A stretch of 64,000 nucleotides of DNA from Selaginella moellendorffii (Eukaryota > Plantae > Lycopodiophyta): positions 814,667 to 878,666 of the forward strand of contig NW_003314304.1 in assembly GCF_000143415.4 (NCBI RefSeq), given 5' to 3'. Under the pieces are notes generated by a model. That model saw only the letters and a program-made list of their open reading frames with translations, was not told the DNA's origin and ran no database searches. Shown piece after piece: positions 6,077-39,964 of this stretch (positions are counted from its first letter, which is position 1; each line of letters starts with the position of its first letter). The translations under genes were made by a program, and so were the position numbers.

Positions 6077-6439
6077 TGGGATGACGTTTAGGGTTAGGCG
6101 AGTCGTGCGCTAGTGCTAAATTTTGCAAACCATCCACAAATTCCACCATCCATCAATTCATCGATTTCGTTCTGGTCCTTTCCACTTGCGAGCAATGGCG
6201 ATGACGAGCGATGACACCATGCATTTGAGCCTCACGTTCTTCAGCTCCAAAGATTGCCCTTGCCCGTTCCTTCCATTCACAGTCAATCCCACCATGCCAT
6301 TCTCGTTGGCGATCTTCTTCAGTTCACTGCTTGTTTGGAAATCAACCTTTTAGCTGAAAGTGTATCCAAGCATTCGAATATCCAGGAGTTAGTACAAGCC
6401 ATAAGTTTAGGCTAATTTTTTTTGCTTGAGAGAGTAAGA

Positions 6440-8461
6440 AAAAAATAAAAAACAGTTACTGGTTTTGATTGTTTTTTTTTTACTGAATGAGCATTTTAAT
6501 CACTGATGGATTAATTGAAGTAAAATTTCACAGCTGAAATACTGATCTTACTTATCACTAAAACTTAACAAACACAATTTTATCAAGTTTTTCATTAGCT
6601 CTAAACTTAAAAAGTATTATTTAAAAAAATTTAAATAAATAACTTTTTTGAAATATTATATTTTTGTAATTACATAAATAGAAAAATGATATATAAAAAT
6701 ATTTCTATTATTCATAGACTATAAAAAAAATGGACATTTGATATTAAGTAGATCAAGTGCATACATAAATATAAACTAAATGATGGATTAAACATAGTGA
6801 TTATTAAATAAATATATTTTTTTTTATGAGAATAAAATTCTTAATTTTTCTAACAAGATAATATTTTATAGTATATTTTTCTTACCGTGAATTTGAAATG
6901 AATTTTTTTTCATTTAAATATATTCCATAAAAAAAATTATCTAAAATAAAACTACCAACTAAAACTAAAATTTATATTTAGGTAGTTAATTTTGTTACTT
7001 ATGAATATTCATTATATAAACCAAGATGCTTTGCCAGGGATAGATTCCCTGCTCGGTCAGGCATAGCACTGGATTACAGTTGCCAAACACACGGCGTCCC
7101 ACTTTGGCATTCGATCTCTCGCAAAGTTGCATTTCGAAAAGGACCGGACGGCTTGATGACCATGAAAAATACTAAAAAAAGGAAGTTTCGAGAGATTAAA
7201 TGATTACACTCGATGCGTTAAAAGGAAATGGCAATTTGATAAAAAAGAGCATATTCCTTTTTTTTTAGCCCTTGGGCGGGAAAGCAGCGGAGCGCGATGG
7301 CGGAGAAAGAGAAGGCAATGAATAACAAGGTGGGTAAGAGGAGAACGCCAAAGCAGAATCCATGCCGCCTCACGTTCGTCAAAGAGAAGCGGCTCGATCA
7401 CAACCTCAAGCGCTGGACTAAATAAGAAGAAAATAAAAAATAGCTATTGGTTTTGCTTGCTTTTTTGGTTGTTGAATGAGCATTTTGATCATTGATGGAT
7501 TGATTGGAGTGAAATTTCACGGCTGAAATACTACTGAATTCAATTTGATACAAATGCATAATCCTACAAATAAGTTTCTTTATATAATTTTCACCCTTAC
7601 TTATCACTAAAACTTAACAAACATAATTTTATTAAGTTTTTCATTAGCTCTAAACTTAAAAAGTATCATTATTTAAAAAAATTTAAATAAGTAACTTTTT
7701 TGAAATATTATATTTTTGTAATTACATAAATAGAAAAATGATATATAAAAATATTTCTATTATTCATAGACTATAAAAAAAATGGACATTTGATATTAAG
7801 TAGATCAAGTGCATACATAAATATAAACTAAATGATGGATTAACCATAGTGATTATTAAATAAATATATTTTATTTTTTATGAGAATAAAATTCTTAATT
7901 TTTCTAACAAGATAATATTTTATAGTATATTTTTCTTACCGTGACTTTGAAATGAATTTTTTTTCATTTAAATATATTCCATAAAAATAAATTATCTAAA
8001 CTAAAACTACCAACTAAAACTAAAATTTATATTTAGGTAATTAATTTTGTTACTTATGAATATTGACTATATAAACCAAGATGCTTTACCAAGGATAGAT
8101 TCCATGCTCAGTCGGGCATAGCACTGGATTATAGTTGCTAAGCACACGGCATCCCACTTCGGCATTCGATCTCTCGCAAAATTGCCTCTCGAAAAAGACC
8201 GAACAGCTTGGTGATCATGAAAAAATACTAAAAAAAGGAAGTTTCGAGAGATTAAATGATTACACTAAAAGGAAATAGCAATTTGAAAAAAAAGAGCATA
8301 TTCCTTTTTTTTTAGCCCTTGGGCAGGAAAGCAGCAGAGCGCGATGGCGGAGAAAGAGAAGGCGATGAACAACAAGGCGGGCAAAAGGAGAACGCCAAAG
8401 CAGGATCCACGCCGCCTCACGTTCGTCAAAAAGAAGCGGCTCGATCACAACCTCAAGCGCT
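6440..8461. repeat. Direct tandem duplication of a ~1 kb unit (~6440-7415 / ~7430-8461): very AT-rich block plus a PPR-like remnant
   Basis: Near-identical AT-rich runs (6560-7020 vs 7600-8070), and both units end in 'cggctcgatcacaacctcaagcgct'. Part of the unit (7025-7280) recurs inverted at ~30085-30365. Confidence 0.9.
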
Positions 8462-8879
8462 AGACTGAGGTGCAAGAATCTCTTTCTTTGCTTTGAATAA
8501 TTCTTTCCTTGGACAAAACAAATCTTCTCCTCCTCCTCCTCCTCCTCCTCCTCAGGAGCACGACGATCCAGTGCCAGAGCCAGAGGCGGAGATGGAGATG
8601 GAGCCAGAGCCAGAGGCGGAGAATCCCATTGCCACAATGTATGTGTGGCCATGTATCATCCTATAAATGTCTGGATCCTCGTCTGGATCTCAATCGTTCT
8701 AAATTAATCAATCTTTCTGTTCTTGGTTCTAGGGTCTGTCTCGATCTGGATCGTTTCACGATGCAACTATTTTTCTAGAGTTTTGGCCATGGCGGAGCTT
8801 GCAATTGAAAGAATTTAAGCGGTGCAAATCTCTATGGCTCCTTCGAAATTGAGATCTCAACATAGAGCATGAATATGGA

Positions 8880-9706
8880 TCTACTGGTAGCAAGCTGCAA
8901 AACAGGATCCTCCACCAGTGTATCCCGGAAGAAAAGAATGCCAACTTGTCATTTGAGCGTCGATCGGACCTTTTTTCACGCGCTCAATCCTCTGATCCGT
9001 CTCGTCCATAGTTTTCTTCCCAGCATCCATGAGTTGCTGGTTTGACATTGCTACAAAAACGAAGACCAAAGAGCTTAGAGAATCAAGCGAGACAAGTCGC
9101 GACTTACTGGACACCATCTTTAAGTTTGGATCCGTGAGGTCAGTGCGAGCACATTCGCCACCTTCCCTCAACTGCGACCTTTTGTTCCCCAGCGAGCTCG
9201 TGTACCTGGGCGAAACCAAGGAAAAAGAGAAGAACTTGTGAGACACCGGCATGGCGAAGGAATGCATACACAAGAACTCACGTTTTGCGCAGGGCCACAT
9301 ACGAGTTGAGCTCCTTGATCTGCAAGAGACACCATCGTAGCGCTCGCAAAATCTCCTGGCCTGGAACTTACCAGTGACTGCTCCTTTTCATTCAGCTGCT
9401 TCGTCAAATCCGGTGGATTCATCGACTCCTCCTCCTTGATCTCCCTAAACTCCTTCATGAGCCTACATTGACCCTTTAGCGTCTCTAGCTAGCACAGCCA
9501 GGAGGCAGCGAGACCGACCTCTTGCACTCGCGCAGCCCCTCCAGATCCTTGCTCTGCCGGCCAGGCTCCTTGATCTTGTCCATCTTGGATCAGTGAGAAT
9601 TTCTAGAGAATTTCTATAGCGAAGCGAGCATGGCGACTGACGAGAGAGCCCGGAAGAGATCCTTGTGGCCATCTAGATCTGCGATCGTCGGGCTGAGCTC
9701 GGCCAT
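8880..9706 (-). pseudogene. NPSN (novel plant SNARE) degenerate copy 1
   Basis: MAELSPTIADLDG..LFRALS, KMDKIKEPGRQSK, LMKEFREIKEEE..QLNEKEQSL, IKELNSYVALRKT, MSNQQLMDAGKKTMDETDQRIERVKK; has small deletions and is truncated before the TM segment. Confidence 0.85.
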
Positions 9707-10499
9707 CGTCTCGCGCCTACAGCCCTCCCGCCCAAACCCCCGCTAAAACCCTAAATTCCAACAAATATTCCTTCTTGGCCGCCATTCGCGCTTCGATAGC
9801 CCTAAATTCTAGGAATATGCTCAGGGTTCTCTAATATGCAGCACTTTGGAAAGGGCCTGGTTCCCTCCAACACCTTGACGAAAGTGTGGACGTCGCCCCA
9901 CAAGCCCAGCCCACATTGCATGACCAGAATCCACAGGCAAACGCTCAAATCCACCGCCCAGCCCAGCCTCGACAGGGATTTGGAGCCTCCCTGCCACAAG
10001 AGACGAAGAGCGGCTTGATCCCATGAATTTGTTGCGGACATGGGAGAATGAAAAGTGATGAGAGACTATCTTCTTCACTTACCGTGTTCCATCCAAACGC
10101 ATCTAGGACGAAAGACTCACGTGGTCCCCGTATCTTGGTGTCCATACCTCCTCTGAAGGTATAAACACTTGGGAGAGGGTCTCGTGACTCGGTGGGAGCA
10201 GGGCCTCTCGAGTCTTCTCTTTAGAAGTTTCTACATGACTTAAATGGAGCTCGAGGGGATGGAGCTTTGATAGGACTTTCACTGACCTTTCAGCGAGAAT
10301 CAAGGGATAAACTCTTTAAGGTTTCTCGTTTGACCATGACTTTGGCATTTTTTTATAAGGGCCTTCGTCTGAGCGGGAAGATCTTCCTCTGGCAGCTTCG
10401 TCCAGGTCGAGCAAGTTCTACCTTGCTCATCGCCGGCAAAAGGTTGCGTTCCTCCGTGTAATCTTTCCCTCTCTCACGCTCAATCACAGAAGGATTTCG

Positions 10500-11070
10500 G
10501 CGACATTGCTGACCGAGAAGCCAAATCCGCCAGCGCCAGCGTCGCAGGAGCCGATTGGCAAGTAGCTCGAGCTCATCGAGCTCAAGCAAGCCCGAGCGGA
10601 GCAAGGGTTTAAACGGTACATACTCCTCCCACGGTCCTTTTTCTTCTACTTGTTTCCTGTGATCGATCGATCGTTCCTTTTCTTCAGGATTTTGTGATAC
10701 CAATTTTGGATCGACTGCTGATCGTGACTACGACCTTCTTGATTCCTTTGGTATATATTTCTTTCGTGGTTCTCTTTGTTCTTCACATGTACGAGAGTTT
10801 CGGGTGGTGGAGACGAGCAGACTATCTCAAAGTACATTTCTCTGAGAGCTGGAATGAGCTCCATCACTTGCGATGAGCAATGGTTTGATCACTTCCTCGT
10901 TCAACACATCGCCGTGGCTTACTACTTCCTCACTTCGCTTATGTACGCCATCAGCCCACGCATGGCATGTAAGAATTTCTAGCTACTTGCACCATGGCAG
11001 ATCACTTGTGGAGAAACACGACTTCTCAACTTACGACAAGTTCATCATCGAGAAATGTATTGCAAGTTCA
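10500..11070 (+). pseudogene. Plastid terminal oxidase (PTOX/IMMUTANS) fragment
   Basis: VLHMYESFGWWRRADYLKVHFSESWNELHHL, WFDHFLVQHIAVAYYFLTSLMYAISPRMA, VEKHDFSTYDKFI; frameshifts, deletions and intron remnants. Confidence 0.9.
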
Positions 11071-11405
11071 CTGGTTCACCCAAAATGGTTATATAGCAAT
11101 TCCCACCTGTAGCTAAGATACCAGTGACAAGAACTTTGAGGAATTTTCAATTTTCAGCTCGAAGCTTGCAGAGTGCAAGGCTTCAAAGCTCGTCAGCCTT
11201 GGGACAACACTACGTCAATAGAAGTTTACGAAGCCTCCAATTTCAAGAGTTTGGATCCAAGGTAGACTATTTAAGAAACTCACCGACTCTTCAAGTTTAT
11301 TCCAGAATTAAATTATAAAAAACGTCATTTAAATTTTTAACTTGATGTTTTTGACCCTTGATCGACTCCCAGAATTCTTGAGCTATCGAATCCTTCCACG
11401 TGGGA

Positions 11406-11830
11406 ATTGTGGTGGCGACTCAAGCGTCGTCACCATCTCCCCATTGGTGGACTTGGATCGTCCAGGCTCGTACGTGGTCGTCGCAGAGATGCCAGGCACG
11501 CAGTCGGCCACCGTGGACATCGCTTGGGTGGAGGACAAGTCGGGCTTTGTGTTCAAGATCACTGGCGTTGCCGAGACGAAGATGATGGCGGAGAAGCGGT
11601 GAGAGTAGAGCGGGGAGAAGCGAGCACCAAAGTGTTTGCTCGCAGGCTTTACTTCCCCACGGTGTTGTGCAGGATGTGGCAACATATCACCTTAGTGATG
11701 GGCTTCTCAAGGTGACGCTACCCAAACATGTTCCAAGCCTTGGGCAAAGTATAGCGGGCCTATGGAATAAAGCGTTAAAGCATGTCATATGCCAAGGTGT
11801 TCAGTTTGGGAGGATGAGGGCGAAGTACTG
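11406..11830 (+). pseudogene. 3' half (second ACD) of the double alpha-crystallin sHSP gene, frameshifted
   Basis: Matches 34735-35160 with indels. The promoter sequence 'atcgaatccttccacgtggga' is joined directly to 'attgtggtggcgac', so the first ACD is deleted. Confidence 0.88.
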
Positions 11831-12519
11831 AGTGTATGTTGTAAAACCTTCATCATAATCAATATCACATTTAAAATGCTGCTTTTTAATTCTATAAAAG
11901 GTTATGAGAGAAACTACAATATTTATTGCGTCATGAAGTTTATTATTGCAGACCTAAGAAACATTAAAAGCTTGCTCTTTGAATATGCTTCCAGGATTTC
12001 CTCTCGATGATGAGAGAATTTTTGAGGCCATGGCCAAGAACCATGTGTTTGCAGGGCATTAAAGCTCGGCCATCTCGCTCTTCTAGTTAATGCAGCTTGA
12101 GGGAACTATCAGATCCAACCTCAAGCCAAAGGATGTTTTGAAAATTACATTTTAGACAAGGACAGGTCATTATGAGTTTTTGGTGATGTTGTTTAGTTTT
12201 GACAAATGCTTTTATAACTTTTTAAAGATTGATGAATTAAGTTTTATACCCTTATTTAGGAAAATTTACAATTAATTATTTTGATGATATTTTAGTATTT
12301 AAGGAGGAACATGGTATGAAGTGTTTTACAACTTTTGAGAGATAACAAACTCTACTCAAAGTTATCAAAGTGTGAGTTTTTTTAAAGAAGATTGGATATT
12401 TCAGGCATTTGATTTTAGTACATGAAATGAAAACTTACAAAAATTCACATCGTGGTTAATTGGTTTATACCTTCAACAGTGAGGGCTGTTGATATAGAGG
12501 GCCCTTTCCCATCCTGGCT

Positions 12520-13180
12520 TGCTGCCATGCGTGTTCCAGAACACAGGTGCTACTGAAACTAAAACAGCGTCTTACTTCTTATTACATCAACTGGTTGCTA
12601 AAAGTTCAACTCCATCAACCACAGCTGGCAAGGTGACTTTGGATACCCTCAACCTCACCGAGCTCTGGATTGATACTGATAAGCTCAGCATCCAGTCGCA
12701 TTCCCTGAAGAAGCTCGAGGTTATGAACAACAAAGATCTTCAATTGATCGTCCTCCGTCGGCAAATCTAGAGTACTTGAAGCTCTGAGTCTTGAAAAAAT
12801 GAAGCTGTGCTTCTAGCCAACATAGCAGGTGGCTGTGTACGTTGGACCTTTCAAACTTCCAAGGGAGAGTCTAACAAGTACAGCCAAACTCAGGTGCTTG
12901 AGATTTTGATTCAGAGGCTTTCATTCACTGGATGCTCCAAAGAAGCTCGAACTCTTTTAACCTGTCTGGGAGTTGTTGAAGAGATGCTGGTGGAAGTAGA
13001 TCACGCTGAGGAATAACGGTACTCGTTTCATTGATCATCTCGATGCAACGATGTTTCAGCTCCGGAGTTTGCCAGAAGTCTCCTCACTCCATAAGCTGGT
13101 GATCACCTGCTGTTTCGAGCTGCTTCCAACGATCAACTCCAAGGAAGGTGATTTAGTCGTAGTATCCTGAAATGTAGTCG
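12520..13180 (+). pseudogene. Possible F-box/LRR(FBD)-like remnant
   Basis: Leu-rich fragments LNLTELWIDTDKLSIQSHSLKKLEV and SLHKLVITCC, with stops and frameshifts. Confidence 0.3.
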
Positions 13181-13184
13181 TAGT

Positions 13185-14777
13185 CGACATTAAGAGCATG
13201 AACAACGATCTGTTTGTAGCCGCATGGTGGAGGGCCGCGGCCAGAGTTATTCCTTCAAACATGATGATGAACGAGTGCACAAGTGTGTAGAAGTCAAGGA
13301 TAAAAAACTAATTAATAAATAAAATAAAGATAAAAAAATAAAAGAAAAAGGATAATGAAGCATCCGATGGCGATGCTCTGATCGAAGAAAAGCCTTAAAA
13401 AAATCCGAAGCCTTCCCCTCCCCTGTGCAGCTCGCTGCTGATCTGAAGAGAACCTCGAGCACATCTACTCCAAATGATTGGAAAAGCTTGTCAAACACCA
13501 GCAGCATACAGAAAACATTCAGCGAATGATTGTGAAAACTAGAAGAATAAACGTATTGAAAAAAATAAATGATTAAAAAGCCAGACCTCGAGCATGTTGT
13601 AGATCACATAGAGCTTGATGTTTGGCTCGAATCTGATAGAGTGATAGATGTACCTGATCTCTGGAACTCATACACACACATAAAAAAAATTGAATAAATG
13701 AATTTGAGCAGCGAAAAATGATTGAGGAGCTCACCAGCTTGCTGAAGAGCCTTCACTCCGGCGATTAATATGATCAAACAACATAAGTCGCACCAGTCAC
13801 TGGGTCCGACTGTCCGGAAGTTCCTGCTCGAGAAATATATCAATAAAAATGAATGTATAAAAGATGTAAAATCACCTTACACGGTTCGGTAAAACCATCA
13901 GGAGCCGCAATGGAGTCACAGTTAAGAGTGACAAGAAAGAGTCTAGGCAGACAAAGAAACAAGCTGAGTAAGAAAAAACAAGAACAAAGTGAATAAATTC
14001 AAACCGAATGCAACCAAACAAAATAAAACTGGAAAAAAAAACCATAAAACTGACCAGCTCGCAGCGCCAGGGAACATTGCACAAGACATTGTACCCGCGC
14101 TCCCGGCTTTGTTCGCTTCCGGTTCTTGTCGTAATTTGCAGAGCAGCTCCATCAGTGAGCTCGTCCATCACATGTTGAACCGGAGAAAAATCCAGTTCCA
14201 TGTCTGAAATATTTCAAAAAATAAAAAGAATTATATCCTGAAGAAAACAAAAAATGTCGCAACATACTTACACTCATTGCCAGCATTCATAAGTTGTCTC
14301 CAGTGAGCTCCACTGGTGGGATCAAAAGCTGGTGGAAGAGCCGGGAAAGGTTTGTCAGCCTCGTTCTCGAGCTTCTTCTGTGAACCCGGTTCGGTTTCAC
14401 CATCGGGTTCAAAGTTGATAACCGAGGTATGTTGGCGGAGAAGCGGGCTTCTCCGCCAGAGGTGTGATGAACGACTGAGGTAGCCGGGTCTTCAACCCGG
14501 GAGCTGCATGTGTCTTCGTCCACCAGAAGAAGAGATCCATTGGCGGGCTCTGAAGAGCTCTTGCTTTCTGCCGGTGGGAGATCAAGCCTCGGGCGGTGAT
14601 GGAGGCCGCCATTGGAGTGAACAGTGGCCTCCTCGATCTCTGGCGGGCTCAGCTCGGAGCTGGAGCGGGTGGGAGACCCTAAACCCTAAACCCTAAACCA
14701 GAAACATCGCGGAGCAGCACATCGTAGGAGAAGCTCCGGCTCATGCGATGATGATCCTGGGATGCTGCTGGCGCCAT
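13185..14777 (-). pseudogene. POD1/TAPT1 (DUF747) membrane protein, 3'-truncated and frameshifted
   Basis: Spliced exons give NVPWRCEL, FFVCLDSFLSLLTVTPLR, IYHSIRFEPNIKLYVIYNMLE|VFDKLFQSFGVDVLEVLF, HSFIIMFEGITL. Exon 1 is disrupted by (TTTAGGG)3. Confidence 0.85.
14677..14697. repeat. Interstitial plant telomeric repeat (CCCTAAA)3
   Basis: ccctaaa ccctaaa ccctaaa. Confidence 0.95.
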
Positions 14778-17469: not shown

Positions 17470-17860
17470 CAAGAAGTAACTGACCAGGATTTGGCGGATT
17501 CGAGCCGACTCCCCGAGCAAAGGGCTAGGAACAGAATCCTAAGTCAACTCAAGACCCTTCGCGACAAGATCAAATGATTCTTCAACACGTTGCAGGATCT
17601 CTGTAGGTTGCAAGTCAAGCTCCATGTTACCCGCTTCAATTTTGCTGCAATAGAACGAGAGCAACCAAGCTCAGCATGACGTGAATTTAGATCCGCTTCT
17701 TACCTGTAATCAAGGATAACATTGATAATCCCCAGCAATACCTCTCCACTGCTGCGAGTAGTAGAAGCATACTCGCCTTGCTCATCCGTTATGTCCGTTT
17801 CAGCGTCCATGCCAATCACGGCATTCATTGGAGTACGAATTTCATGCGACATGTGAGCAA
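17470..17860 (-). pseudogene. Hybrid histidine kinase HisKA-region fragment
   Basis: H-box [47 protein letters not shown]; deletions and stops. Confidence 0.85.
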
Positions 17861-19575: not shown

Positions 19576-19607
19576 AACATTCAATCATCATAAGACATAA
19601 TACAGAC

Positions 19608-20640: not shown

Positions 20641-20644
20641 CTAC

Positions 20645-24261: not shown

Positions 24262-24622
24262 GATTAGTGATTGATCAAGCTCTGCCATGGCCAAAACCCT
24301 AGAACAATAACAAAACCAAGTTGCATCAGATCGAGACAAAATTAGGAACATAACATATGCCTAAATTAGAACAATTAAGATTCAGACATTTTAAAGAATG
24401 ATGCATAGCCACACACAAATTGTGGCAATAGACTTCCGCTCTACCGTCTCCTCCTCCTCCTCCTCCTCAGGAGCATGACGATCTAAAGCCAAAGGCGGAG
24501 ATGGAAACAATCGTTTTGTTCCTAGTTTTAGGGTCTGTCTCGATCTCTATATTTCACAACGCAATCTTGTTCTGTTATTGTTCTAGGGTTTTGGCCATAG
24601 CAGAACTTATCAATCACTAATC
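24262..24622. repeat. Fold-back element: ~75-85 bp inverted arms around ~200 bp
   Basis: 'gattagtgattgatcaagctctgccatggccaaaaccctagaacaataac' matches the reverse complement of 24575-24622. The interior derives from 8520-8800. Confidence 0.85.
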
Positions 24623-28555: not shown

Positions 28556-28566
28556 ATCAGGATGAC

Positions 28567-28940
28567 CAACAACTCTGCTCTAGGAGTTCTACAAAGGTTT
28601 CTAGAGGATTGTTCGTGAGCTTGGAGTCGCAGCTAGAGATCATGCAGCACGCATCAACAGGGGGATGGAACTCCATGCTCGAGAGCCTGCCGTGTGGAGT
28701 GCCAATGCTGGGGTGGCCATCTATGTTCGAGCAAATCACGAACCAAGCTGGTGCTGGAAGGCGAGGGCGTGGGAATATAATTCTCGAGATCTGGAGGGAA
28801 GGATGGATTTGCGCCGAGAGAAGAGGTGGAAGAGAAGTGAGGGCGATCATGGAGGGAGAGCAAGGCAGGAGATTGAAGGCTGCTTCTCCCGGAGGTTCTT
28901 CTCATACGAACCTTAAGAAATTCGTGGAGAGTCTCGTCTC
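28567..28940 (+). pseudogene. UDP-glycosyltransferase (UGT) C-terminal fragment; inverted copy at ~25660-26070
   Basis: Eroded PSPG box RGLFV..QLEIMQHASTG-GWNSMLESLPCGVPMLGWPSMFEQ, then VRAIMEGEQG and GGSSHTNLKKFVE. Confidence 0.88.
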
Positions 28941-29289
28941 ATTCATTCATAAAAGTTTAAATCACTATTGGTTTTCGATCGCTCCTAATCCCTAGAACGC
29001 GATGCTTACACCATATACCCAGAACGGGTATGTTTAAGTATTGAAGCTTCTCTTTGATACCATGGACGAGAGAGATGTGATCTCTTGGCCCAAAATGTTA
29101 TAGGCGTACTCTTAAAGCGATAGTTTGATAGATGCCGATAATGTTTTCGGAAACATTCTCAGATAGATTGTAGTTACCTGGACTGCTATGGTTCACGCGA
29201 ATGCCTAAGCCAGGCATCTGGAAACAGAAAGACAGATCTTCGACACGATGATAGAGAAGAATCAAGTGTTGTGGAACACTCTCATTGCG

Positions 29290-30810
29290 AGATTTTCTCA
29301 CAATGGATCGATCAAGGAGGCGATATCGTGTCTGTGAGTTCTCTGATCTTCCGCTCACAGCGAGCTTGGCAATGTCGATCGAGCACAAGCTATAATCGAT
29401 TCCACTCCTCTGGTGAGCACTGCACTCTGAAACATGATCCAGACAAGGCCAAGACCATCTTCAGTCGCTAGATGAAGCAGCGGGATCTCGTGTTGTGGAA
29501 CTTGATGATCTCGGCGTTCTTGCTGAGCGGCAATCACAACAAAGCCCAGCGGCTGTTCGATTCAATGCCCGAGCGAGACGCGGTGTCCTGCAAATTGATC
29601 CTCGTGATCTGCATGCAGCAGGGGGATCTGGAACGAGCGCAGCACCTGTTAGATTGAATGCCGTGCCACACTGCGATTTCCTGGAACTCCATGATCGTGG
29701 GGCTCTCACAAATCTCTCTCAAGCAGAGAAAATCTTCGGCGAGATCCCCCAGCGCGTTCTCTCCTGAAAACGTCCAAGAGAACTCTCAGTCGATTGCACC
29801 AATCGAGTGCCTTCTTCTAGAGCTCCCACTTTCGCCACCTTCTGAATTCTCGTCAAGAGAGCTTGTCATGAGGAGCCTAGTCATGATCACTCACTGCTCC
29901 ATTGTTTGTCATATTGATTGCAGCTCTAGCTAAGCAACCTAATGATGATGTAGTGAGTGTGAAACTGATTCGATCATTCGCCTCGTCTGAAACACCGAAA
30001 TATTGCAAGATCACGAGTGAGAAAGACTTACATGTTATTGTGACTACACTGCCATATCGATCCACCTTCGCCTCTGCCTCTGGCTCTTTCTCCGCCCAAG
30101 GAAAGAAAAAAAAAGGAATATGCTCTTTTTCTCATTTCCTTTTAACGCATCGAGTGTAATCATTCAATCTCTCGAAACTTCCTTTTTTAGTATTCTTCAT
30201 GAGCATCAGGCTGTGCGGTCCTTTTGGAGGCTTAAAAGAGACAAAGGTGGTCACGGTGATCGAAGCGAAAGATCTGCTCGATCGAATGCCGGAGTGGGAT
30301 GCCGTATGCTTGGCAATTGTATCAGTGCTATGCCCGAGCAAGGAATCTATTCCTGGCAAAGCAACTCTTCGATTCAAGGCCCGCGAAGAACATCGTCGCA
30401 TGGTCTGTGATGGTGTGCTGACTAAAACAGGATTGAGGAGGCGAAGTATCTGTTTGGCATAATGCCCGAGAGAAACAGCGCGGTGGGGAATGCGATGCTA
30501 GCAGCATTTACCCAAGCAGGGTATTTGCATGACGCAGAGAAAGTCTTCGATCGAATGCCCGAACCGGATGGAATTGAAGACCTCTCGGGCTACTCACAGC
30601 TTGAGATTTCATGCGTAAGCCACGATCGTAGTTTTGGAAGAATTCCATGCAGGAGCGTGATCTTGTTGCCTGGAGCGTGATCATCCTGCATATGCCCAGA
30701 TCGCGGATGTTGCTGTGGTGCTTAAGCTCTTCGATCGAATGCCCGCGCGGGACATGTTCGATTATCGCGGCTATTGCTCAGTACGGTCAAAGCGCAGCAG
30801 CGATGGAGAA
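29290..30810 (+). pseudogene. PPR pseudogene fragments
   Basis: MKQRDLVLWNLMISAF, LFDSMPERDAVS, NAMLAAFTQAGYLHDAEKVFDRMPE, LFDRMPARD. Confidence 0.85.
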
Positions 30811-30864
30811 CAAGTCCAATGCCGGGGTGTTCGTTGCTCTTCCAGAAAGATCGAGGAGTGCTGG

Positions 30865-31220
30865 CAGCGTGTCTGGATCGCTCTCACGGCGCTGACGAGC
30901 AGCAAGGAGATCAAGCGAGGGGACATGAACAAGCTTTACGAGCTTTGGGACGCGGTTTCTAAGCAGCAAAGTTTCTATCTCGTGATATCTTTGAGGGATG
31001 CTCGTTTTGATGGAGTTTTACGCGCCTCTTCTCCAAGGTAAAGTGATTTTTCAATCATTCGCAGGAGTTTTACGAGACTAAAGCAGCGGCGGATGGTTCT
31101 TCCAGCGTTGTTCGTGTTGTCTGGGGTTAAACATTGCTACGACAGTTTCGGATCATCATGACTGGAGGAAATTGTAGCTGCGGAGCTCTTGGTAAGCTTT
31201 GAGCTTTCCTTTTTTCTATG
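30865..31220 (+). pseudogene. Chimeric EF-Tu + MATE fragment, copy A
   Basis: 30871-30955 matches EF-Tu 61521-61625. 30995-31062 matches the MATE reverse complement of 5355-5281. 31063-31215 matches the MATE reverse complement of 5850-5625. Confidence 0.85.
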
Positions 31221-31937
31221 ATAATTGTCAGTGAGGTCCAATGGTTGCTGCTTTGGTAGATTGGAGACGAGTCTTTGGTAAGTGTTCTAAGCTTTCTTTG
31301 GTGTTTGCTCAGGTACTTCCATTCTTCTGCTAACAGGTTTGCCACTGGTATGTATGTTTCATTTTTCCTTTGTATGTTTTCTTTGGGTTGGGGCTATTGT
31401 CTATAGCGTGGAAGTCGGGCGTTACAGAGAAACAAAACAAGCTCGGTGAGGTACCGAAGCTTTGGTCGTTCATTTCTAACTTCGTTCCCCCAGGTTGAGA
31501 GAAACTAGCACGCATGGAAAATCGAGAATTCGAAAACTTTTCACGACTTCCGTTCTCTGGCTGAGCAAATTCAAACCTGCCATTCGTTTATCTGTGTGAT
31601 CCAGTAATCTTAAGACACAAGTAATCGTCTCCATACAACTTTACAAGACAAGACCAATTTCATACCAAAAACTTCGATTCGTTTGATGCTCTAGCAAAAT
31701 TACATGAGAACGAACAAGAGCTCGAGGAATCTCGTTCTCAAGGCATTGAGAGGAGAAGGCAGGAAAGCTCCAAGCTTTGAGCTTTAGAGAAAGAGGAGGA
31801 GGAGGGGAAAGGCACGAGCACTTCTATCCCCCAAAGATCCGACGAAGGGAAACAAAGGGAGGGGAAAGACACGATCATTTCTTTCCCCAAAAGCGCCGAT
31901 GAAGAGAAACAAAGAGAAGAGGAAGGGAAAGGCACGA

Positions 31938-32429: not shown

Positions 32430-32610
32430 CCAAAGGATCACGATTCGCGGCTCGAGGGCGCCGACCTGGTAAGTCGCCATAGATGGAATTTGCATTGGAA
32501 TGTAGCTAGAGATTTCTCACGGTGTATGGCCAGACTAGCGGCAATTTGCACGCCGGCAGACTATAACACCCGGCCGCTCTACAGTCTCTATTGACACATT
32601 GCCAGTGGTA
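32430..32610 (+). pseudogene. Inverted fragment of the AXS gene (exon 1-intron-exon 2)
   Basis: Matches the reverse complement of ~2820-3070, including the intron, with about six short deletions. Confidence 0.92.
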
Positions 32611-32754
32611 AGTCTGTGGTTTTTTCTTTTAGAGAAGAGATTTCCTTTTGAGAACTTCAGTGACTGAGAGATATTGCTTGGACAACAACAATTTTTCTAG
32701 GCATGGAAAGTTTGCCCGAGGACAGGAAGACATGCTCAAAAGAACGCATATACT

Positions 32755-33360: not shown

Positions 33361-34111
33361 CTTCAGAGAAGTTAGACCAAAGAAAGCACCTTCCATTCCC
33401 CTCGCAAATTTCAGCATTGCGGCACTCTCCTGGCAGCAGGAGCGATGGTGACGAGGATGCGCATTTGGACGAAGAAATCCGGACAATTGCGCTGGGGGCA
33501 AGGGTGGCGAGTCTTTATTCTGAAGTGCAGCGCTTAATTAAATTACAAATAAATTGCTACATGTTGCACTTGGTTTGTTAATTACTTATTAATTCAATTG
33601 ATCAAATAAAGTCTATAATTATAAGTATGTTTGTAATTTATAAACACAAGATTAATCAATAAAAATAATATATAAGAAAAGGTTTCAGAAAGTTTATAAA
33701 TTATAAACATGCTTATAAATTATAAATACAAAATTAATCGAAATGAATAACAACCGTTAGCTGGTAGAATATTCAAGAATATTTTAGGTATATCCACTCA
33801 GTCCATTTGCTTGTGGCATTCATTTAAATTAATTGTTTAAATAATTTATAAATTTTCCTAAACACATCCTGATTAGAGCATTAAGAAAACCACTTTCTTC
33901 AATTTATTTTTTCTCCACTAGCGAAGAAAGAGTGGACAAAAACAAGAGACGAAGATGGTGAGGATCTGTTTCCAGTTTAACTTGATGTTTTTGATCCTTG
34001 ATCGACTCTCAGAATTCTTGAGCTATCGAATCCTTCCACGTGGGAGCTCATACCTTTTCTTTTCTTGTATATAAGTCATGGTCCAGTTGCTAGGGCAGAG
34101 AAGGGTGAAGA

Positions 34112-35173
34112 ATGGCGATGGCGGCAGCGAGGGCGGCGATGGCATTCTTGGTGCTTGTCGCGGCGCAGGCGTGCGGCCGTGATTACTGCTCTCTCCGTCA
34201 GGCGCGCGGCTGCGGCAACAGCACGGTTGAGGTAGAGCACGCTATGAGCGCGCACAAGTGCTTCATAGCCGACACGGTTGTAGCTGCCACGCTCACAGAT
34301 GTGCGCCGTCTCCCCAACTCGTATCTCATCCTTTTGGAGATGCCGGGCGTGGCGAGCAGCAGCGATGTCAAGGTGGAGGTCTCGGGCTCTCAATTCCATC
34401 GAGTCGTGTCTATCGTTGGGATCTCTCACGAGGCGAAAGAGCGTCGCATCCTCAGGGATCGTGGTGCCTTCACCAAGATGTTTGCGCGAGAGTTTGTGCT
34501 CCCCGATGCAGTGGACGCGGAAAGGATAAGCTACCAGCTTCACAGTGGTCTGTTGCGGATGACGCTGCCGCTTGTCCCAGGGCTGGAGCAAACAGGGCGA
34601 GAGCAGCGAGAACAAGTTGTGGAGGAGGAGTACCTTGCGGTGGCTGCCGCGCGTGTTCCTCCGGCCTCGTGCACCATTTCAGACGCGGCCGGGCTCATTC
34701 GGCCTGAAGCTCTCGCCTCCAACGACGCAGATGATTGTGGTGGCGACTCAAGCGTCGTCACCATCTCCCCATTGGTGGACATCGTGGATCGTCCAGGCTC
34801 GTACGTGGTCGTCGCGGAGATGCCAGGCGCGCAGTCGGCCACCGTGGACATCGCTTGGGTGGAGGACAAGTCGGGGTTTGTGCTCGAGATCACTGGCGTT
34901 GCTCGAGATGAAGATGATGGCGGAGAAGCGGTGAGAGTAGAGCGGGGCGGAGCGAGCACCAAAGTGTTTGCTCGCAGGCTTTACTTCCCCCGCGGTGTCG
35001 TGGAGGATGTGGCAACATATCACCTCAGTGATGGGCTTCTCAAGGTGACGCTACCCAAACATGTTCCAAGCCTCGGGCAAAGGATAGCGGGCCTATGGAA
35101 TAAAGCGTTAAAGCATTTCATATGCCAAGGTGTTCAGTTTGGGAGGATGAGGGCGAAGTATTGTTTCAGGTAA
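34112..35173 (+). CDS. Second intact copy of the signal-peptide double-ACD sHSP
   Basis: 353 aa, near-identical to 22079-23146; TATATAA upstream. Confidence 0.85.
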   Translation: MAMAAARAAMAFLVLVAAQACGRDYCSLRQARGCGNSTVEVEHAMSAHKCFIADTVVAATLTDVRRLPNSYLILLEMPGVASSSDVKVEVSGSQFHRVVSIVGISHEAKERRILRDRGAFTKMFAREFVLPDAVDAERISYQLHSGLLRMTLPLVPGLEQTGREQREQVVEEEYLAVAAARVPPASCTISDAAGLIRPEALASNDADDCGGDSSVVTISPLVDIVDRPGSYVVVAEMPGAQSATVDIAWVEDKSGFVLEITGVARDEDDGGEAVRVERGGASTKVFARRLYFPRGVVEDVATYHLSDGLLKVTLPKHVPSLGQRIAGLWNKALKHFICQGVQFGRMRAKYCFR

Positions 35174-35289
35174 ATATGTAGACAGAGTATACGTTGTAAA
35201 ACCTTCATCATGCATTTAAAATGCTGCTTCTTAATTCTATAAAAGGTTATGAGAGAAACATGCGGCCATGAAACATTTAAAGCTTATGC

Positions 35290-35735: not shown

Positions 35736-35989
35736 AGACATGCATACCAGTGGCAAAGCGAGGAAAGATTTGGAGCCATTCTTCCAAATAGTTGAGAAAT
35801 AGGTGAGAAAAAACTTGTTAGCAAAAGAGTTTAAGTACCTGAGCAAACACCAAAGAAAGCTTAAAACACTTGCATGGTGAGAGCTCCAGAAGCTTGTGAA
35901 TGCCTCATCGCCATAAGATGAAAGTCTCATCTCCAATCTACTAAAGCAGACCTCGTTGACAATTATCATAGAAAAGCTGCTACAGAAAA

Positions 35990-36290
35990 GGAACCAAGAG
36001 CTGCGCTGTTACAATTTCCTCCAGCAAAGGTCGTGATCTTCCGAAACTGTCATAGCAATGTTTTCCCCAAGACAACACGAACACGCTGCTTTAGTCTCGT
36101 AAAACTCCTGCGAATGATTGAAGCTCAAGAATCATTTTACTTTGGAGAAGTGGAGTTGCGTAAGACTCCATCAAAACGAGCATCTCATCAAACATATCCC
36201 GTGTCCCGAAGCTCGTAAATCTTGTCCATGTCCCCTCGCTTGTTGCTCGTCAGCGCCATGAGAACGCACGGGAACGTTGCCTCCCGCTCC
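35990..36290 (-). pseudogene. Chimeric EF-Tu + MATE fragment, copy B (inverted relative to copy A)
   Basis: ~35740-36320 is the reverse complement of ~30820-31360. Confidence 0.85.
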
Positions 36291-36422
36291 TCGATCTTTG
36301 GCAGCGCTCAGAACAGCGGCATTAGGCATTTAAATACCCTGGTTAAGAGGTTACATATGCCGGTGGAGCAAACTTCACTCCCCAAAATTTACATTTATGT
36401 CTATGAACATTTCCTATCCCAG

Positions 36423-36983
36423 TTAACTACTTAATTTCCGTGAAATAATATACTCCTCCTCCACAACTTGTTCTCGCTGCTCTTGCTGCTCCAGCCCTGG
36501 GACAAGCGGAAGAGTCACCCGCAAGAGACCACTATGAAGCTGGTAGCTTATCCTCTCCGCGTCCACTGCATCGGGGAGCACAAACTCTCGCGCAAACATC
36601 TTGGTGAAGGCACCACGATCCCTGAGGATGCGACGCTCTTTCGCCTCGTGAGAGATCCCAACGATGGACACGACTCGATGGAATTGAGAGCCCGAGACCG
36701 CCACCTTGACATCGCTGCTGCTCGTCACGCCCGGCATCTCCAAAAGGATGAGATACGAGTTGGGGAGGCGGCGCACATCTGTGAGCGTGGCAGCTACAAC
36801 CGTGTCGGCTATGAAGCACTTGTGCGCGCTCATAGCGTGCTTGACCTCAACAGTGCCGTTCCCGCAGCCGCGCGCCTGGCGGAGAGAGCAGTAATCACGT
36901 CCGCATGCCTGCGTCACGACAAGCACCAAGAATACTATCGCCGCCCTCGCTGCCGCCCGTTTACCCATTGCCATCCCTTCCAT
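36423..36983 (-). CDS. Truncated single-ACD sHSP copy (open 186 aa ORF)
   Basis: Signal peptide and ACD1 up to VVEEEY, then a new tail IISRKLSS*. Confidence 0.6.
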   Translation of the reverse strand: MEGMAMGKRAAARAAIVFLVLVVTQACGRDYCSLRQARGCGNGTVEVKHAMSAHKCFIADTVVAATLTDVRRLPNSYLILLEMPGVTSSSDVKVAVSGSQFHRVVSIVGISHEAKERRILRDRGAFTKMFAREFVLPDAVDAERISYQLHSGLLRVTLPLVPGLEQQEQREQVVEEEYIISRKLSS

Positions 36984-38019
36984 AGAATTATATACAACAT
37001 AAGAAAAGGGAACGACGATTTAAGGAAATAAACACCTTTATCAGTGTTTTTTTCAGTTATTTTTTGTTTATTCTTTTTCTTTCTTAGGGCTATTCCAGTG
37101 TGAGCAGCTCACAGCTCATGTTCGTGACATAGTCGGTGAGAGTCGTCGCTCTCATACTCCATGCGATGGTCCCATAACACTAAGATCCAATCGAAGAGCC
37201 ACTTCACCTGCCCGGGGCCACACCTTCCGTACATCTGGACGAGCAGGTTGGCGAGGTATCGATTGGGCCAGTGGTCATTGCTTCGTACACGTTGGTCCCA
37301 TCGTCAAGGTCTGTACACGCCTGCCGTAACGTCAAACAAGTCAAATGGGAGATTTCAGGCAGGAGTTGTTATGCAATGTCACGATGGTTTTTTCTCTCGA
37401 GCATGCATTGCATAGCCTGTGATCATCGTGGGCTAGGAGATGTTCTTTGTGGGATTTGCATCAAAGAGATGCTAACTGGATCACACAGATACCATATAGT
37501 CTTATCTACTGCTTTTTTCCATCTAATTGCGACAAGAGGGAAGGGATCTAAGAAGGACAATGCCCGTGCTTTTGCACATATCTTTTGGGGAACGGAAATT
37601 AAAGTTATCTTTAGCTGGTATGGAATAAGAAACGAATTTGTTTGATCAATTGCTGAGTGAATTATGGTGCTATGGACATTGTATGCACAAGGAAGATTTT
37701 AAAGCACACCATTCCTTTCTTGTACCGCAGCACAGCCCAAGTCCACGTTTCCAATGGCAACAGAAAACACGTGTGGGCTGTACGAATATTCCACATTTCA
37801 AATGCGCCTCCCCTTTATTCTCTACTAAACTGGGCATTAGATGCTGCATCAGTCAACATCGATTCCAAAACTTGGGTTCCCAATCTGGATCAAACACAGA
37901 AAAGACGCAAAGCAGTCAAAGCAGTCAAAGCAGACGCAATTGATTGAAGGAAACTGGAACTAGATCGAACAAAGGAAAGACGTTAAGAACTCGAGGACTC
38001 GGGAAAAAGAAAAAGACAA

Positions 38020-38130
38020 TCGAGTTGTCTCTTGTGATTGTCATGTCTGGAATGTTATCATATCATACTGCTTTGAGCTCACGTCAGGGTCCTGTGTGTG
38101 CTGTGGCACCAATGAGAAGTACGAACATAA
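38020..38130 (-). pseudogene. Second AXS fragment
   Basis: Matches 1652-1820 ('gtcatgtctggaatg', 'gagctcacgtc', 'tgtggcaccaatgagaagta') with deletions. Confidence 0.75.
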
Positions 38131-38152
38131 GGATTGCTGGCCCGATAACTTA

Positions 38153-38212
38153 TCTTCCCGTGTTCCCGCTGTTCTTCCCGTGTTCCCGCTGTTCTTCCCG
38201 TGTTCCCGCTGT
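38153..38212. repeat. 20-bp minisatellite x3
   Basis: (tcttcccgtgttcccgctgt)3, perfect. Confidence 0.95.
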
Positions 38213-39964
38213 GCTTCTCGAGCGTGATCCTCACTCCAGGCTACTATCCTGGGCGGAAAGAACTGCTTTTGCTTCAGTCGCGCTGCCGATCAATCCATCG
38301 GAAATGCGCATCCTCACCACCACATGGTGTTGCTGCCTGGATGCAAGGGGACAATGCTGAAGTTTGCAAGGGGACTGGAAGGCGCATCGTGCAAAGATAA
38401 AGAAGCCGATCACCAATTCCTCTTATAGCGATCAAGAGCGTCAGGGGGCTCCCAGAGGTGGCGACGCATTCTCTCTCTTGTCAGGCTCACGGCAACTTTG
38501 GCATCTGGCCAGATAAAAGTGTGATCTTAAGTCAGTTCTTCTTCATTCTTTCTCTGTTCTTTAGATGGGCTTCGCTACCACCAGAGGTCTTCGGATTGTC
38601 CAGGTAAGCGAGTGTCCGAGAAAGAAATTTTTGTTTCTATATAATCGGCTTTTACCTTTCGTGTGTGTTCTTGTGTTTGTCGTCCCGGCAGTGGCTTTCA
38701 AGGACGTGAGCGATGCACTTGCCGTCCCAAAGGGCTGCACTTCATGTTCCAGGAGTAATTGATCTTTGCTCGGATTTCCTTGTGAGGATGGATCCCGTGT
38801 TCTACAAATCCCGTGGATCCAAGGCATGTGTGTTCTTTAAGCGCGTGAAAAAAACTGCCTGATTAGAAAAAGTATGGTCTAATTAGTGTTGGAAGAGCGC
38901 CATCGATACCATTTTTCTAATCATATCGAGCATGGTTTTCATGCTCTTGGTGATGGTGAAGTCTTTTTTAGTTTAGGAAATGGATCTGGCCAGAAATAAC
39001 AAGAGTTCCAACTATCAATCACTTAATAGTATTTAACTATATATGATAAAAAGAGTATTCATATCCACTTTCAATATTTTGAAATCAAATAAATATGGCA
39101 ATGAATATGTAGTTGTGCATGAGAGTATTATATATTTACACATGTACGAATATATATTTTTGTTTTAAGTTATATGCAAAATATTATGCACACAATTAAC
39201 ACGTAACTCTAGTTTTTTTTAAAAATCATACTTCTATCATTGAGTGTAAATTTTTTATCTTTTAATTATGACAATCTCTCTCCTCTTCTACAGCACAGAT
39301 TCTAGCACAATCTATTGAATCTTTCTACATTAGAGCATGTTGCAATTGAAATATGCATTCAATAGTCTGGGCGATTTTATATAAAATGCTGAGAATACCA
39401 GTTGAGTGAAGCATTTAATCTTGTGTGATATGGGGCATCCTTGATTGGTCTTTTCTTGTTTGTAGCAAAGAATCTCCATTGCAAGAGAGGCTAATGGTTG
39501 ATTAGGTTTTACATCAAGCTTTGCAGCAGCATCAGTAGTAAAATCTATAAGCTATGGAAGAGGTGTGAAAAAAAAGTGGTGAAGAAAGTTCAAATGGTTT
39601 AAAGTGAATATTAGCCATCAATTTGGCAAGCACACTTATTATTTCTTATTTTTCCTATTTATAATTACTAATTTCATTTTCTTGGTTTTTTTTTGTATCT
39701 CTCGACATCTCTTATGTCTCTGGCTAGCAAAACGTTTTTGGTGGGTGTTGAGAACAATCATCGATAAAAAACAAACTGGATATATGCCAAACAAATGTCA
39801 CAAAAAGTTAAATTGCTTTCTCTAATAAAATTCATTTAAAAAACTGTACTTCCTAGGACTTAATATTACTTAATCTCAAAAAAGCTTAATTAACTTTGCC
39901 ATTTTGATGAACAACTTAAATTCACAAAAATGACTTTTTTTGGAAGAAATTCTTAAAAAAAATT

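What the first reader, a model, noticed from the sequence alone, without database searches (positions are those of the whole stretch)
6400..39900. 33 kb gene-fragment shuffling zone containing pieces of the genes flanking it on both sides
Seen: between intact syntenic-looking blocks lies a patchwork of more than 12 unrelated gene families as intron-containing fragments in both orientations. Several match neighbours in this window: AXS (32430-32610, 38020-38130), MATE coding sequence (31000-31215, 35990-36185), MATE upstream DNA (26130-26260) and EF-Tu (30871-30955, 36190-36290). No transposase, Rep/helicase, RT, LTR or TSD was recognised. Inference: a local DNA-level capture process such as repeated template switching (FoSTeS/MMBIR-like), templated DSB repair or a non-autonomous Helitron/Pack element, acting as a nursery for the orphan genes inside it.
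Basis: partly seen in the sequence, partly recalled or inferred. Interest (0 to 1): 0.85.

Follow-up and report, generated by a model that had tools for sequence, protein, structure and literature searches.

The report
Local gene-scrap patchwork around sHSP cluster
A 33-kb stretch of the spikemoss Selaginella moellendorffii genome is a real patchwork of a growing small-heat-shock-protein gene cluster and dead, intron-bearing scraps of other genes, some copied from its own neighbours. It was most likely built by repeated break-repair copying, re-duplication and small deletions, which is a known kind of genome wear.

Summary
The window is Selaginella moellendorffii scaffold GL377608.1. Between MATE (about 3.8-6.1 kb) and O-FucT (about 40-42 kb) lies about 33 kb of mosaic DNA.

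- **Not an assembly error.** The second haplotype (GL377690.1) is collinear across the whole zone and contains every junction, so the zone predates the haplotype split.
- **Not a dispersed repeat family.** Independent DNA contigs give the donor pieces the same depth as the DNA around them. sHSP paralog loci on other scaffolds carry none of the mosaic pieces.
- **No transposon hallmarks.** I found no transposase, reverse transcriptase or helicase domain, no terminal inverted repeats or direct repeats at the edges, no target-site duplications, and no convincing Helitron end.
- **Built in several events.** Divergences range from about 3% to 20%. One EF-Tu/MATE chimera was made once and later copied in inverted orientation. 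One haplotype has a recent 582-bp insertion with no target-site duplication.
- **Eroding by deletion.** The copies lose DNA through small deletions.

Best reading: recurrent local break-repair or template-switch copying, plus unequal crossing-over in an sHSP cluster. The "orphan-gene nursery" idea is only weakly supported. The scan has already reported the same kind of local patchwork on other pieces of this genome.

The parts
1450..3230 (-). Donor gene AXS (UDP-apiose/xylose synthase), intact and expressed
   Evidence: Epimerase domain. ORF translations. Annotated as 410 aa in haplotype 2. Spliced mRNA reads were seen as loose ends.
3830..6076 (-). Donor gene MATE transporter
   Evidence: ORF translations. 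Annotated as a 548-aa MatE protein in haplotype 2. Exon 1 to intron 3 read directly.
60804..62241 (+). Donor gene, organellar-type EF-Tu. This copy has two 1-nt gaps relative to the mRNA, in about 61510-61538.
   Evidence: GTP_EFTU, D2 and D3 domains lie in two frames. mRNA loose ends differ from the window by two single bases.
6435..8466 (.). AT-rich tandem duplication (two units of about 1.03 kb, 93.6% identical) at the left edge. A related piece lies at 30086-30366.
8872..12104 (+). Block A, a degenerate copy of block B: an 850-bp unit followed by an sHSP copy that has lost its 5' half in this haplotype
   Evidence: Haplotype 2 keeps the full gene (P0004).
9793..10374 (.). Haplotype-specific 582-bp insertion with no target-site duplication and no terminal inverted repeat. 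The site is empty in haplotype 2 and in paralogous block B.
12566..14131 (-). DUF747 (TAPT1-like) fragment, annotated as a gene model
17703..18065 (-). Histidine-kinase HisKA fragment
   Evidence: E 5e-9. In haplotype 2 it is merged with the metacaspase piece into one 678-aa model.
18771..19091 (-). Metacaspase fragment
   Evidence: E 1e-11 to solved metacaspases. Weak Peptidase_C14 hit.
19792..21572 (+). Two tandem 850-bp units (82% identical). Haplotype 2 has one hybrid unit, indicating unequal crossing-over.
22079..23146 (+). sHSP gene B (double alpha-crystallin domain, 355 aa)
   Evidence: dN/dS 0.21 against C.
23990..24960 (.). Fold-back inverted duplication forming a 970-nt hairpin (arms about 90% identical, spacer about 236 nt)
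   Evidence: -498 kcal/mol, z = -29
24624..30045 (.). Large inverted duplication: arms 24624-25966 and 28571-30045 (81-95% identical), themselves made of PPR and UGT gene pieces. The centre holds a PPR pseudogene (27025-28537, minus strand) and the MATE-upstream pieces (26128-26237).
   Evidence: No target-site duplication at the outer ends.
30846..31340 (+). Chimera copy 1: EF-Tu piece (30879-30956), then MATE exon 3 plus the start of intron 3 (about 30975-31062), then the MATE exon 1 3' half plus intron 1 (31063 to about 31262), then exons of another gene
32439..32725 (+). AXS piece A: donor 3053->2618, inverted relative to the donor. 90.1% identity with 8 deletions and no insertions.
33565..33946 (.). 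AT-rich dispersed repeat, about 400 times the local depth, also present on another scaffold
34112..35173 (+). sHSP gene C (353 aa), transcribed
   Evidence: Exact-match RNA contigs..
35811..36299 (-). Chimera copy 2, an inverted copy of chimera 1. 85% identical, with the same internal junction and the same 9-bp deletion in the EF-Tu piece.
   Evidence: (39 nt identical across the junction)
36423..36983 (-). Truncated sHSP gene D (186 aa, one alpha-crystallin domain), an inverted copy of the promoter and 5' half of B/C. The ORF is open in both haplotypes.
37831..38131 (-). AXS piece B: donor 1820->1469, in the same orientation as the donor

Best explanation
The zone is a duplication-prone, mostly unconstrained spacer built around an expanding cluster of lineage-specific sHSP genes. 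Pieces of nearby genes (AXS, MATE, EF-Tu) and of genes located elsewhere entered several separate times as short DNA-level copies. These copies came from ectopic templates during double-strand-break repair or replication template switching, the process that produces complex 'filler DNA' and SDSA/MMBIR-type mosaics. Later the pieces were re-duplicated together with sHSP segments, often in inverted orientation. They were further shuffled by unequal crossing-over and steadily shortened by small deletions.

Shown: DNA-level local origin, low copy number, presence in both haplotypes, multiple ages, deletion bias, and absence of transposon hallmarks.

Inferred: the repair or replication mechanism itself.
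For: 1. Local donors with introns retained.
2. The chimera abuts an EF-Tu piece against two MATE pieces that are permuted (exon 3 before exon 1). Simple deletion of a larger copy cannot produce that order. The junction is identical in both copies, so it arose once.
3. Chimera copy 2 and truncated sHSP D lie 150 bp apart and are both inverted. Their divergences from their sources match (K about 0.17 and dS 0.18). This fits one inverted duplication copied from two templates.
4. At least five inverted duplications or inversions lie within about 14 kb, including a fold-back with a 236-nt spacer.
5. A recent 582-bp insertion in one haplotype lacks both target-site duplication and terminal repeats.
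6. Duplicate identities span 81-97% and donor-copy identities span 72-91%, so the events were recurrent.
7. AXS piece A lost 31% of its length through 8 deletions and gained no insertions. The zone has 8.6 indels per kb between haplotypes against 1.9 in the flanks.
8. DNA depth over the pieces equals that of neighbouring DNA.
9. No TE domains, Helitron end, edge repeats or target-site duplications were found.
10. Known precedent: filler DNA is copied from sites near the break and can be a mosaic of several origins (PMC2686159). Gene-bearing filler can arise via SDSA (PMC3445842).
Against: - The best-resolved junction (MATE intron 3 to exon 1) shows no microhomology, and the EF-Tu/MATE junction shows at most about 3 nt. 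The MMBIR signature is therefore not demonstrated.
- The events are old, so their junctions have decayed.
- Donors of most fragments (PPR, HisKA, metacaspase, UGT, DUF747) are not in the window and could not be located. 'Local' is shown for only three genes.
- Depth from assembled contigs is a crude copy-number measure, and it covers only 30.7-36.4 kb.
- No whole-genome nucleotide search was possible.
Confidence: 0.55

Rival explanations
1. Erosion only. One or a few large local segmental duplications of the flanking regions landed in the zone. Deletions and inversions alone then reduced them to islands, with no multi-template patchwork step.
For: Deletion-biased decay is clear. BLAST 'islands' turned out to be parts of longer collinear copies (AXS A 436 bp of donor, AXS B 352 bp). 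Earlier scan notes describe such eroded local copies elsewhere in this genome.
Against: The MATE pieces are permuted and abut directly. EF-Tu, 56 kb from MATE, is joined to it with no trace of the roughly 20 kb of genes between them. No further collinear similarity exists between the donors and the zone. The intervening segment 'Y' is not AXS-derived.
Confidence: 0.2
2. Capture by a non-autonomous transposon (Pack-MULE, Helitron or CACTA-like) that picked up gene fragments and inserted here, with later local duplication.
For: Mosaics of short intron-bearing fragments from several genes in both orientations are typical of such elements (PMC3288121 and PMC1947982, listed). The inverted repeats could in principle be long TIRs.
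Against: - No transposase, helicase or RT domain.
- The inverted repeats consist of gene fragments themselves and have no target-site duplication.
- No paired high-copy termini appear in the depth profile.
- Only one weak Helitron-like 3' end in 35.5 kb, and it is not at a boundary.
- The pieces are low-copy and absent from sHSP paralog loci.
- Having three donors in the same 64 kb is not expected from genome-wide capture.
Confidence: 0.12
3. A single catastrophic replication event (chromoanasynthesis-like) created the whole patchwork at once.
For: Many fragments, both orientations, local templates.
Against: Divergences differ widely between parts: 3% for sHSP B/C, 10% for AXS A including its intron, 15% for the chimera pair, and up to about 20% for the inverted-repeat arms. 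Haplotype-specific events are still occurring.
Confidence: 0.06
4. Assembly artefact (collapsed or chimeric contigs).
For: The region is rich in repeats and inverted repeats.
Against: The independently assembled second haplotype is collinear through every junction at 91-99% identity. Contigs from later independent runs cover the stretch with few differences.
Confidence: 0.02

Closest known systems
Complex filler DNA and SDSA 'gap patching' at repaired double-strand breaks in plants (PMC2686159; PMC3445842 and the Wicker et al. work it cites)
   Same: DNA-level copies, often from nearby sites. Mosaics of several origins. No target-site duplication or terminal repeats. Donors stay intact. Chimeric gene structures are created.
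   Different: The pieces here (about 80-440 bp) are longer than classical maize filler (8-131 bp). They sit inside a 33-kb zone that has been re-duplicated many times. The breaks themselves and their cause are unknown.
FoSTeS/MMBIR complex rearrangements (my own knowledge of the Lee/Hastings/Lupski models)
   Same: Several short templates from a local neighbourhood joined in either orientation. Inverted duplications with short spacers.
   Different: Junction microhomology, the defining mark, was not demonstrated. The ages show many events and not one.
Pack-MULE and Helitron gene-fragment capture (PMC3288121, PMC1947982)
   Same: Patchwork of intron-bearing fragments of unrelated genes. Can be annotated as chimeric genes.
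   Different: No TIRs of transposon origin, no target-site duplication, no Helitron ends, no family of copies. Three donors are neighbours.
Tandem gene-cluster dynamics (unequal crossing-over and partial duplicates)
   Same: sHSP copies at 83-97% identity. A hybrid 850-bp unit in one haplotype. A truncated derivative gene.
   Different: Does not by itself explain pieces of unrelated neighbouring genes or the permuted chimera.

Membership tests
Pack-MULE | Terminal inverted repeats of Mutator type, shared with other family members | tested here: not met
   All inverted-repeat pairs of 25 nt or more belong to four systems made of gene or sHSP sequence. No paired high-copy termini in the depth profile of 30.7-36.4 kb. 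Zone edges show no TIR above chance.
Pack-MULE | 8-11 bp target-site duplication | tested here: not met
   Flanks of the big inverted repeat, the hairpin and the chimera pair show no duplicated bases.
Helitron (non-autonomous) | 3' hairpin followed by CTRR, with a 5' TC, at the element ends | tested here: not met
   A simple scan with perfect stems of 6 bp or more found one weak site (14332) in 35.5 kb, not at any block boundary. The scan is crude.
Helitron / any TE | Multiple dispersed copies in the genome | tested here: not met
   DNA contig depth over the chimera and AXS pieces is 420-900, the same as neighbouring DNA, against 3-8x for sHSP and about 400x for the AT-rich repeat. sHSP paralog loci lack the pieces. 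A whole-genome BLAST was not possible.
Any autonomous TE | Transposase, RT, integrase or Rep-helicase coding remnants | tested here: not met
   Pfam scan of all 249 stop-to-stop segments of 60 aa or more in the zone found none.
Filler-DNA / SDSA templated insertion | DNA-level copy of an intact, often nearby donor | tested here: met
   Introns retained. The donor genes AXS and MATE are intact in both haplotypes.
Filler-DNA / SDSA templated insertion | Mosaic of several templates joined directly, in either orientation, without target-site duplication | tested here: met
   Chimera of EF-Tu, MATE exon 3, MATE exon 1 and another gene. A 582-bp recent insertion without target-site duplication.
FoSTeS/MMBIR | 2-5 nt microhomology at the template-switch junctions | tested here: inconclusive
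   The MATE/MATE junction has 0 nt. The EF-Tu/MATE junction has at most about 3 nt and is blurred by later indels.
FoSTeS/MMBIR | All junctions formed in one event | tested here: not met
   The ages of the parts differ from about 3% to about 20% divergence.
Retrocopy (processed pseudogene) | Introns absent, poly-A tail | tested here: not met
   Introns are present in the AXS and MATE pieces.

The most novel reading that the evidence does not exclude
Selaginella moellendorffii may have a specific, locally acting 'copy neighbours, invert, then erode' repair route that repeatedly seeds patchworks such as this one. Its inverted products include the 970-nt hairpin and the inverted EF-Tu/MATE chimera pair. 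These might act as small-RNA sources that regulate the donor genes, or supply new gene variants such as the truncated sHSP.
Probability: 0.08. Interest if true: 0.7.

Novelty: new member of a known kind. Interest (0 to 1): 0.38.

Why it matters
This locus is a well-documented example, confirmed in two haplotypes, of how a compact plant genome with no whole-genome duplication makes and destroys gene fragments without transposons. Nearby templates are copied into breaks, the copies are re-duplicated (often in inverted orientation), and small deletions wear them away.

It also affects annotation. Several gene models here are stitched from unrelated dead pieces, for example the metacaspase + HisKA model and the DUF747 stub. 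One genuine new gene variant, a single-domain sHSP, arose from a partial inverted duplication.

The scan has reported similar patchworks elsewhere in this genome. The phenomenon may therefore deserve a genome-wide survey of junctions and donor distances. This single locus is not exceptional.

Tried and rejected
- Exact-sequence look-up of the raw sHSP ORF found no record. This was solved by going through homologues.
- Synteny in related species: the mTERF neighbour has only its own allele and a 36%-identical Diphasiastrum protein in the protein collection, so no related-species interval could be fetched.
- Donor search for a non-local piece: the UGT fragment's best representative was only 66% identical and had no contig on record. 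Donors of the non-local pieces remain unknown.
- Hypothesis that AXS pieces A and B plus the inverted segment 'Y' are one split AXS copy: Y shows no similarity to AXS above shuffles. Its 25-bp match to 40698-40722 is marginal.
- A very permissive tblastn produced only noise beyond the known hits.
- Rfam gathering scan and tRNA scan found nothing.
- The 'SNARE-like' 850-bp unit and the GT1-like ORF gave no solved-structure sequence match.
- Findings look-ups by sequence and by one set of words were blank.
- Crinkler-type nuclease lead from earlier notes: no such domain was found in the zone by Pfam.


Full report
**Identity of the window**

The 355-aa ORF at 22079-23146 is 100% identical to SELMODRAFT_419652 of Selaginella moellendorffii, on a 1,658,729-bp scaffold. 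Gene look-ups place the window at about GL377608.1:814,688-878,687.

The left flank holds AXS (minus strand, about 1450-3230) and a MATE transporter (minus strand, about 3830-6076). The right flank holds O-FucT, a small unknown gene, an mTERF gene (43372-45099) and, further out, an organellar-type EF-Tu (60804-62241).

Yes.

- AXS: 2687-3053 matches 32691-32439 (inverted). AXS 1551-1820 matches 37871-38131 (direct).
- MATE: exon-1 and exon-3 pieces lie at 30995-31216 and again at 36020-36183.
- MATE upstream DNA lies at 26128-26237.
- EF-Tu: 61539-61625 matches 30879-30956 and 36199-36266.
- E-values reach 1e-23. The two flanks share nothing comparable with each other.

The pieces are genomic copies, not retrocopies. 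The AXS piece contains the end of one exon, the whole intron, the next exon and the next splice donor. The MATE piece contains intron 1 and the first bases of intron 3.

With small search spaces the BLAST 'islands' chain into longer collinear copies.
- AXS A covers donor 3053->2618 at zone 32439->32725.
- AXS B covers donor 1820->1469 at zone 38131->37831.

Other families in the zone:
- PPR, HisKA, DUF747 and HSP20 by Pfam.
- A metacaspase piece and a UGT C-terminal piece by comparison with solved-structure sequences.
- GT1, UBA and AOX hits are weak. The 'SNARE-like' 850-bp unit was not confirmed.

No transposase, reverse transcriptase, integrase or helicase domain was found in any of the 249 stop-to-stop segments of 60 aa or more.

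**Not an assembly artefact, and older than the haplotype split**

The assembly contains a second haplotype of this region (GL377690.1). I fetched it through the sHSP alleles. It is collinear with the window from AXS to mTERF.
- Flanks are 97.7-98.9% identical. Zone segments are mostly 91-98% identical.
- Both chimeras, both AXS pieces and all the large inverted repeats are present.
- Along the collinear chain the flanks differ by 1.27% substitutions and 1.9 indels per kb. The zone differs by 2.28% and 8.6 indels per kb, as expected for largely unconstrained DNA.

**Not a dispersed repeat family**

I laid contigs and reads of four public runs on 30700-36400 at 80% likeness or better. This stretch holds both chimeras, AXS A and sHSP C.

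In the DNA run:
- The chimera and AXS bins have word depth 420-900, the same as the surrounding unique DNA.
- The sHSP gene, a known multi-copy family, has 3-8 times that depth.
- An AT-rich segment at 33565-33946 has about 400 times that depth. It is a dispersed repeat that also appears on another scaffold.

Contig depth is a crude measure, but a family of tens of copies would show up. The two sHSP paralog loci on other scaffolds share only the gene, about 50 bp upstream, and that AT-rich repeat. They contain none of the mosaic pieces.

**Transposon hallmarks were looked for and not found**

- All inverted-repeat pairs of 25 nt or more in the zone belong to four systems made of sHSP or gene-fragment sequence.
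- Their outer flanks show no target-site duplication.
- The zone edges show neither terminal inverted repeats nor direct repeats above shuffled controls.
- A simple scan for Helitron-type 3' ends found one weak site in 35.5 kb, away from any block boundary.

**Anatomy of the key chimera**

Read on the plus strand, copy 1 (30846-31340) contains these parts in order:
1. An 80-bp EF-Tu exon piece.
2. The end of MATE exon 3 with its splice donor and about 17 nt of intron 3.
3. Directly abutting it, the 3' half of MATE exon 1 with the whole of intron 1.
4. Exons of another gene.

The two MATE pieces are in the same orientation but in the wrong order, exon 3 before exon 1. Deleting parts of a larger copy cannot produce this order. 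It requires a backward template jump, a tandem-duplication junction or a circular intermediate.

The junction (…CATTCGC|AGGAGTT…) shows no microhomology with either parent. Thirty-nine bases across it are identical in copy 2. Both copies also share a 9-bp deletion in the EF-Tu piece. The chimera therefore arose once and was later copied in inverted orientation to 35811-36299.

The two copies are 85% identical, K about 0.17.

Copy 2 lies 150 bp from a truncated, inverted sHSP copy, gene D (36423-36983). D includes the TATA region and the 5' half of the gene. Its synonymous divergence from B and C is 0.18-0.20.

The matching ages, the shared inversion and the adjacency suggest one inverted duplication that copied from two non-adjacent local templates. 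This is inference.

**Many events, not one**

- sHSP B and C differ by dS 0.073.
- AXS A is 90% identical to its donor, intron included.
- The fold-back at 23990-24960 has arms about 90% identical.
- The 24.6-30.0 kb inverted repeat has arms 81-95% identical.
- The 850-bp units are 82-93% identical.
- The AT-rich tandem is 93.6% identical.

Events continue to occur.
- Haplotype 2 has one hybrid 850-bp unit where the window has two, which indicates unequal crossing-over.
- The sHSP copy in block A lost its 5' half in the window but is intact in haplotype 2.
- The window carries a 582-bp insertion at 9793-10374. It is absent from haplotype 2 and from the paralogous block B, and it has neither target-site duplication nor terminal repeats. 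That signature fits a repair-mediated insertion and not a transposition.

**Erosion**

Against its donor, AXS A shows 8 deletions (8, 10, 11, 12, 12, 12, 21 and 28 bp) and no insertions. It has lost 31% of its length.

An earlier scan note on another piece of this genome reported an excess of 8-12-bp deletions. Here 5 of 8 deletions fall in that range. Between the haplotypes, however, only 23 of 239 zone indels do. I therefore regard that pattern as untested here.

**What is functional**

The sHSP genes are functional.
- B against C gives dN/dS 0.21. D against B or C gives 0.22-0.25.
- D is open in both haplotypes.
- RNA contigs match gene C exactly.

Of the RNA reads laid on the stretch, 89% ran on into unlike sequence. 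On the AXS and EF-Tu pieces their loose ends spell the spliced donor mRNAs. Reads on 31273-31546 and 35443-35730 carry fixed differences, so they come from parent genes elsewhere.

One RNA-run contig with three differences spans 30700-31037, so low-level transcription of chimera 1 cannot be excluded.

The 'orphan-gene nursery' idea thus rests mainly on gene D and on annotation models that join unrelated pieces, such as the 678-aa metacaspase + HisKA model in haplotype 2.

**Mechanism**

The features are:
- short DNA-level pieces copied from nearby intact donors;
- several templates joined directly and in either orientation;
- no target-site duplications or terminal repeats;
- frequent inverted duplications with short spacers;
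- a fresh insertion without target-site duplication;
- recurrent timing.

Together these fit templated break repair or replication template switching. [quoted passage not shown] Gene-bearing filler can be produced via SDSA (PMC3445842).

I cannot choose between NHEJ-associated filler synthesis, SDSA and MMBIR. The junctions are old, and the clean one has no microhomology.

Rival readings, with my estimated probabilities:
- Pure erosion of large segmental duplications (0.20).
- Transposon capture (0.12).
- A single catastrophic event (0.06).
- Artefact (0.02).

**Limits**

- No whole-genome nucleotide search of this plant was available.
- Donors of the non-local pieces were not found.
- No related Selaginella interval could be fetched.
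- Reads were laid on only 5.7 kb of the zone.

**Relation to earlier scan notes**

Notes on other pieces of this genome describe the same kind of thing: local patchworks of neighbouring genes and 'duplicate then abridge' copies. This locus is therefore another instance, larger and wrapped around a gene cluster, and not a first sighting. I found no paper in the searchable library describing the phenomenon in Selaginella.

Noticed in passing
window 61500-61545: The EF-Tu gene in this window lacks two single bases relative to the EF-Tu mRNA seen in two independent RNA runs. This puts its two halves in different frames (ORFs 60804-61589 and 61339-62241). The cause may be a frameshifted allele or pseudogene, an expressed paralog elsewhere, or a local assembly error.
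   Followed up: partly
window 23990-24960: A near-perfect 970-nt hairpin (-498 kcal/mol, z = -29 against shuffles) formed by a fold-back duplication. It overlaps a weak glycosyltransferase-like gene model and is present in both haplotypes. It is a candidate hairpin-RNA or siRNA locus. No small-RNA data were examined.
   Followed up: partly
window 36423-36983 (minus strand): A truncated sHSP gene with one alpha-crystallin domain instead of two. It has its own copied TATA region and a new C-terminal tail, is open in both haplotypes, and has dN/dS about 0.22-0.25 against its full-length relatives. It is a possible new gene variant born from a partial inverted duplication.
   Followed up: partly
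window 33565-33946; L005 18615-18864: An AT-rich segment just upstream of sHSP gene C has about 400 times the local DNA depth and recurs on another scaffold. It is a dispersed AT-rich repeat or MITE-like element of unknown type.
   Followed up: partly
L005 9611-10601 (GL377646.1) and L006 10171-11038 (GL377658.1): Single dispersed copies of the same sHSP family (78% and about 68% identical) sit among unrelated genes. They carry only about 50 bp of shared upstream sequence. How the gene moved there is unexplained.
   Followed up: no
L002 15932-19553 (haplotype 2); window about 17.1-19.6 kb: The public annotation joins a metacaspase piece and a HisKA piece into one 678-aa protein. This is probably a model stitched across unrelated dead fragments.
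   Followed up: no
window 46464-46512, 49509-49552, 55317-55362: A 40-46-bp motif is repeated three times (89-95% identical) in the right flank, outside the zone.
   Followed up: no
window 63268-64000: A 733-bp (TA)n microsatellite lies at the end of the window.
   Followed up: no
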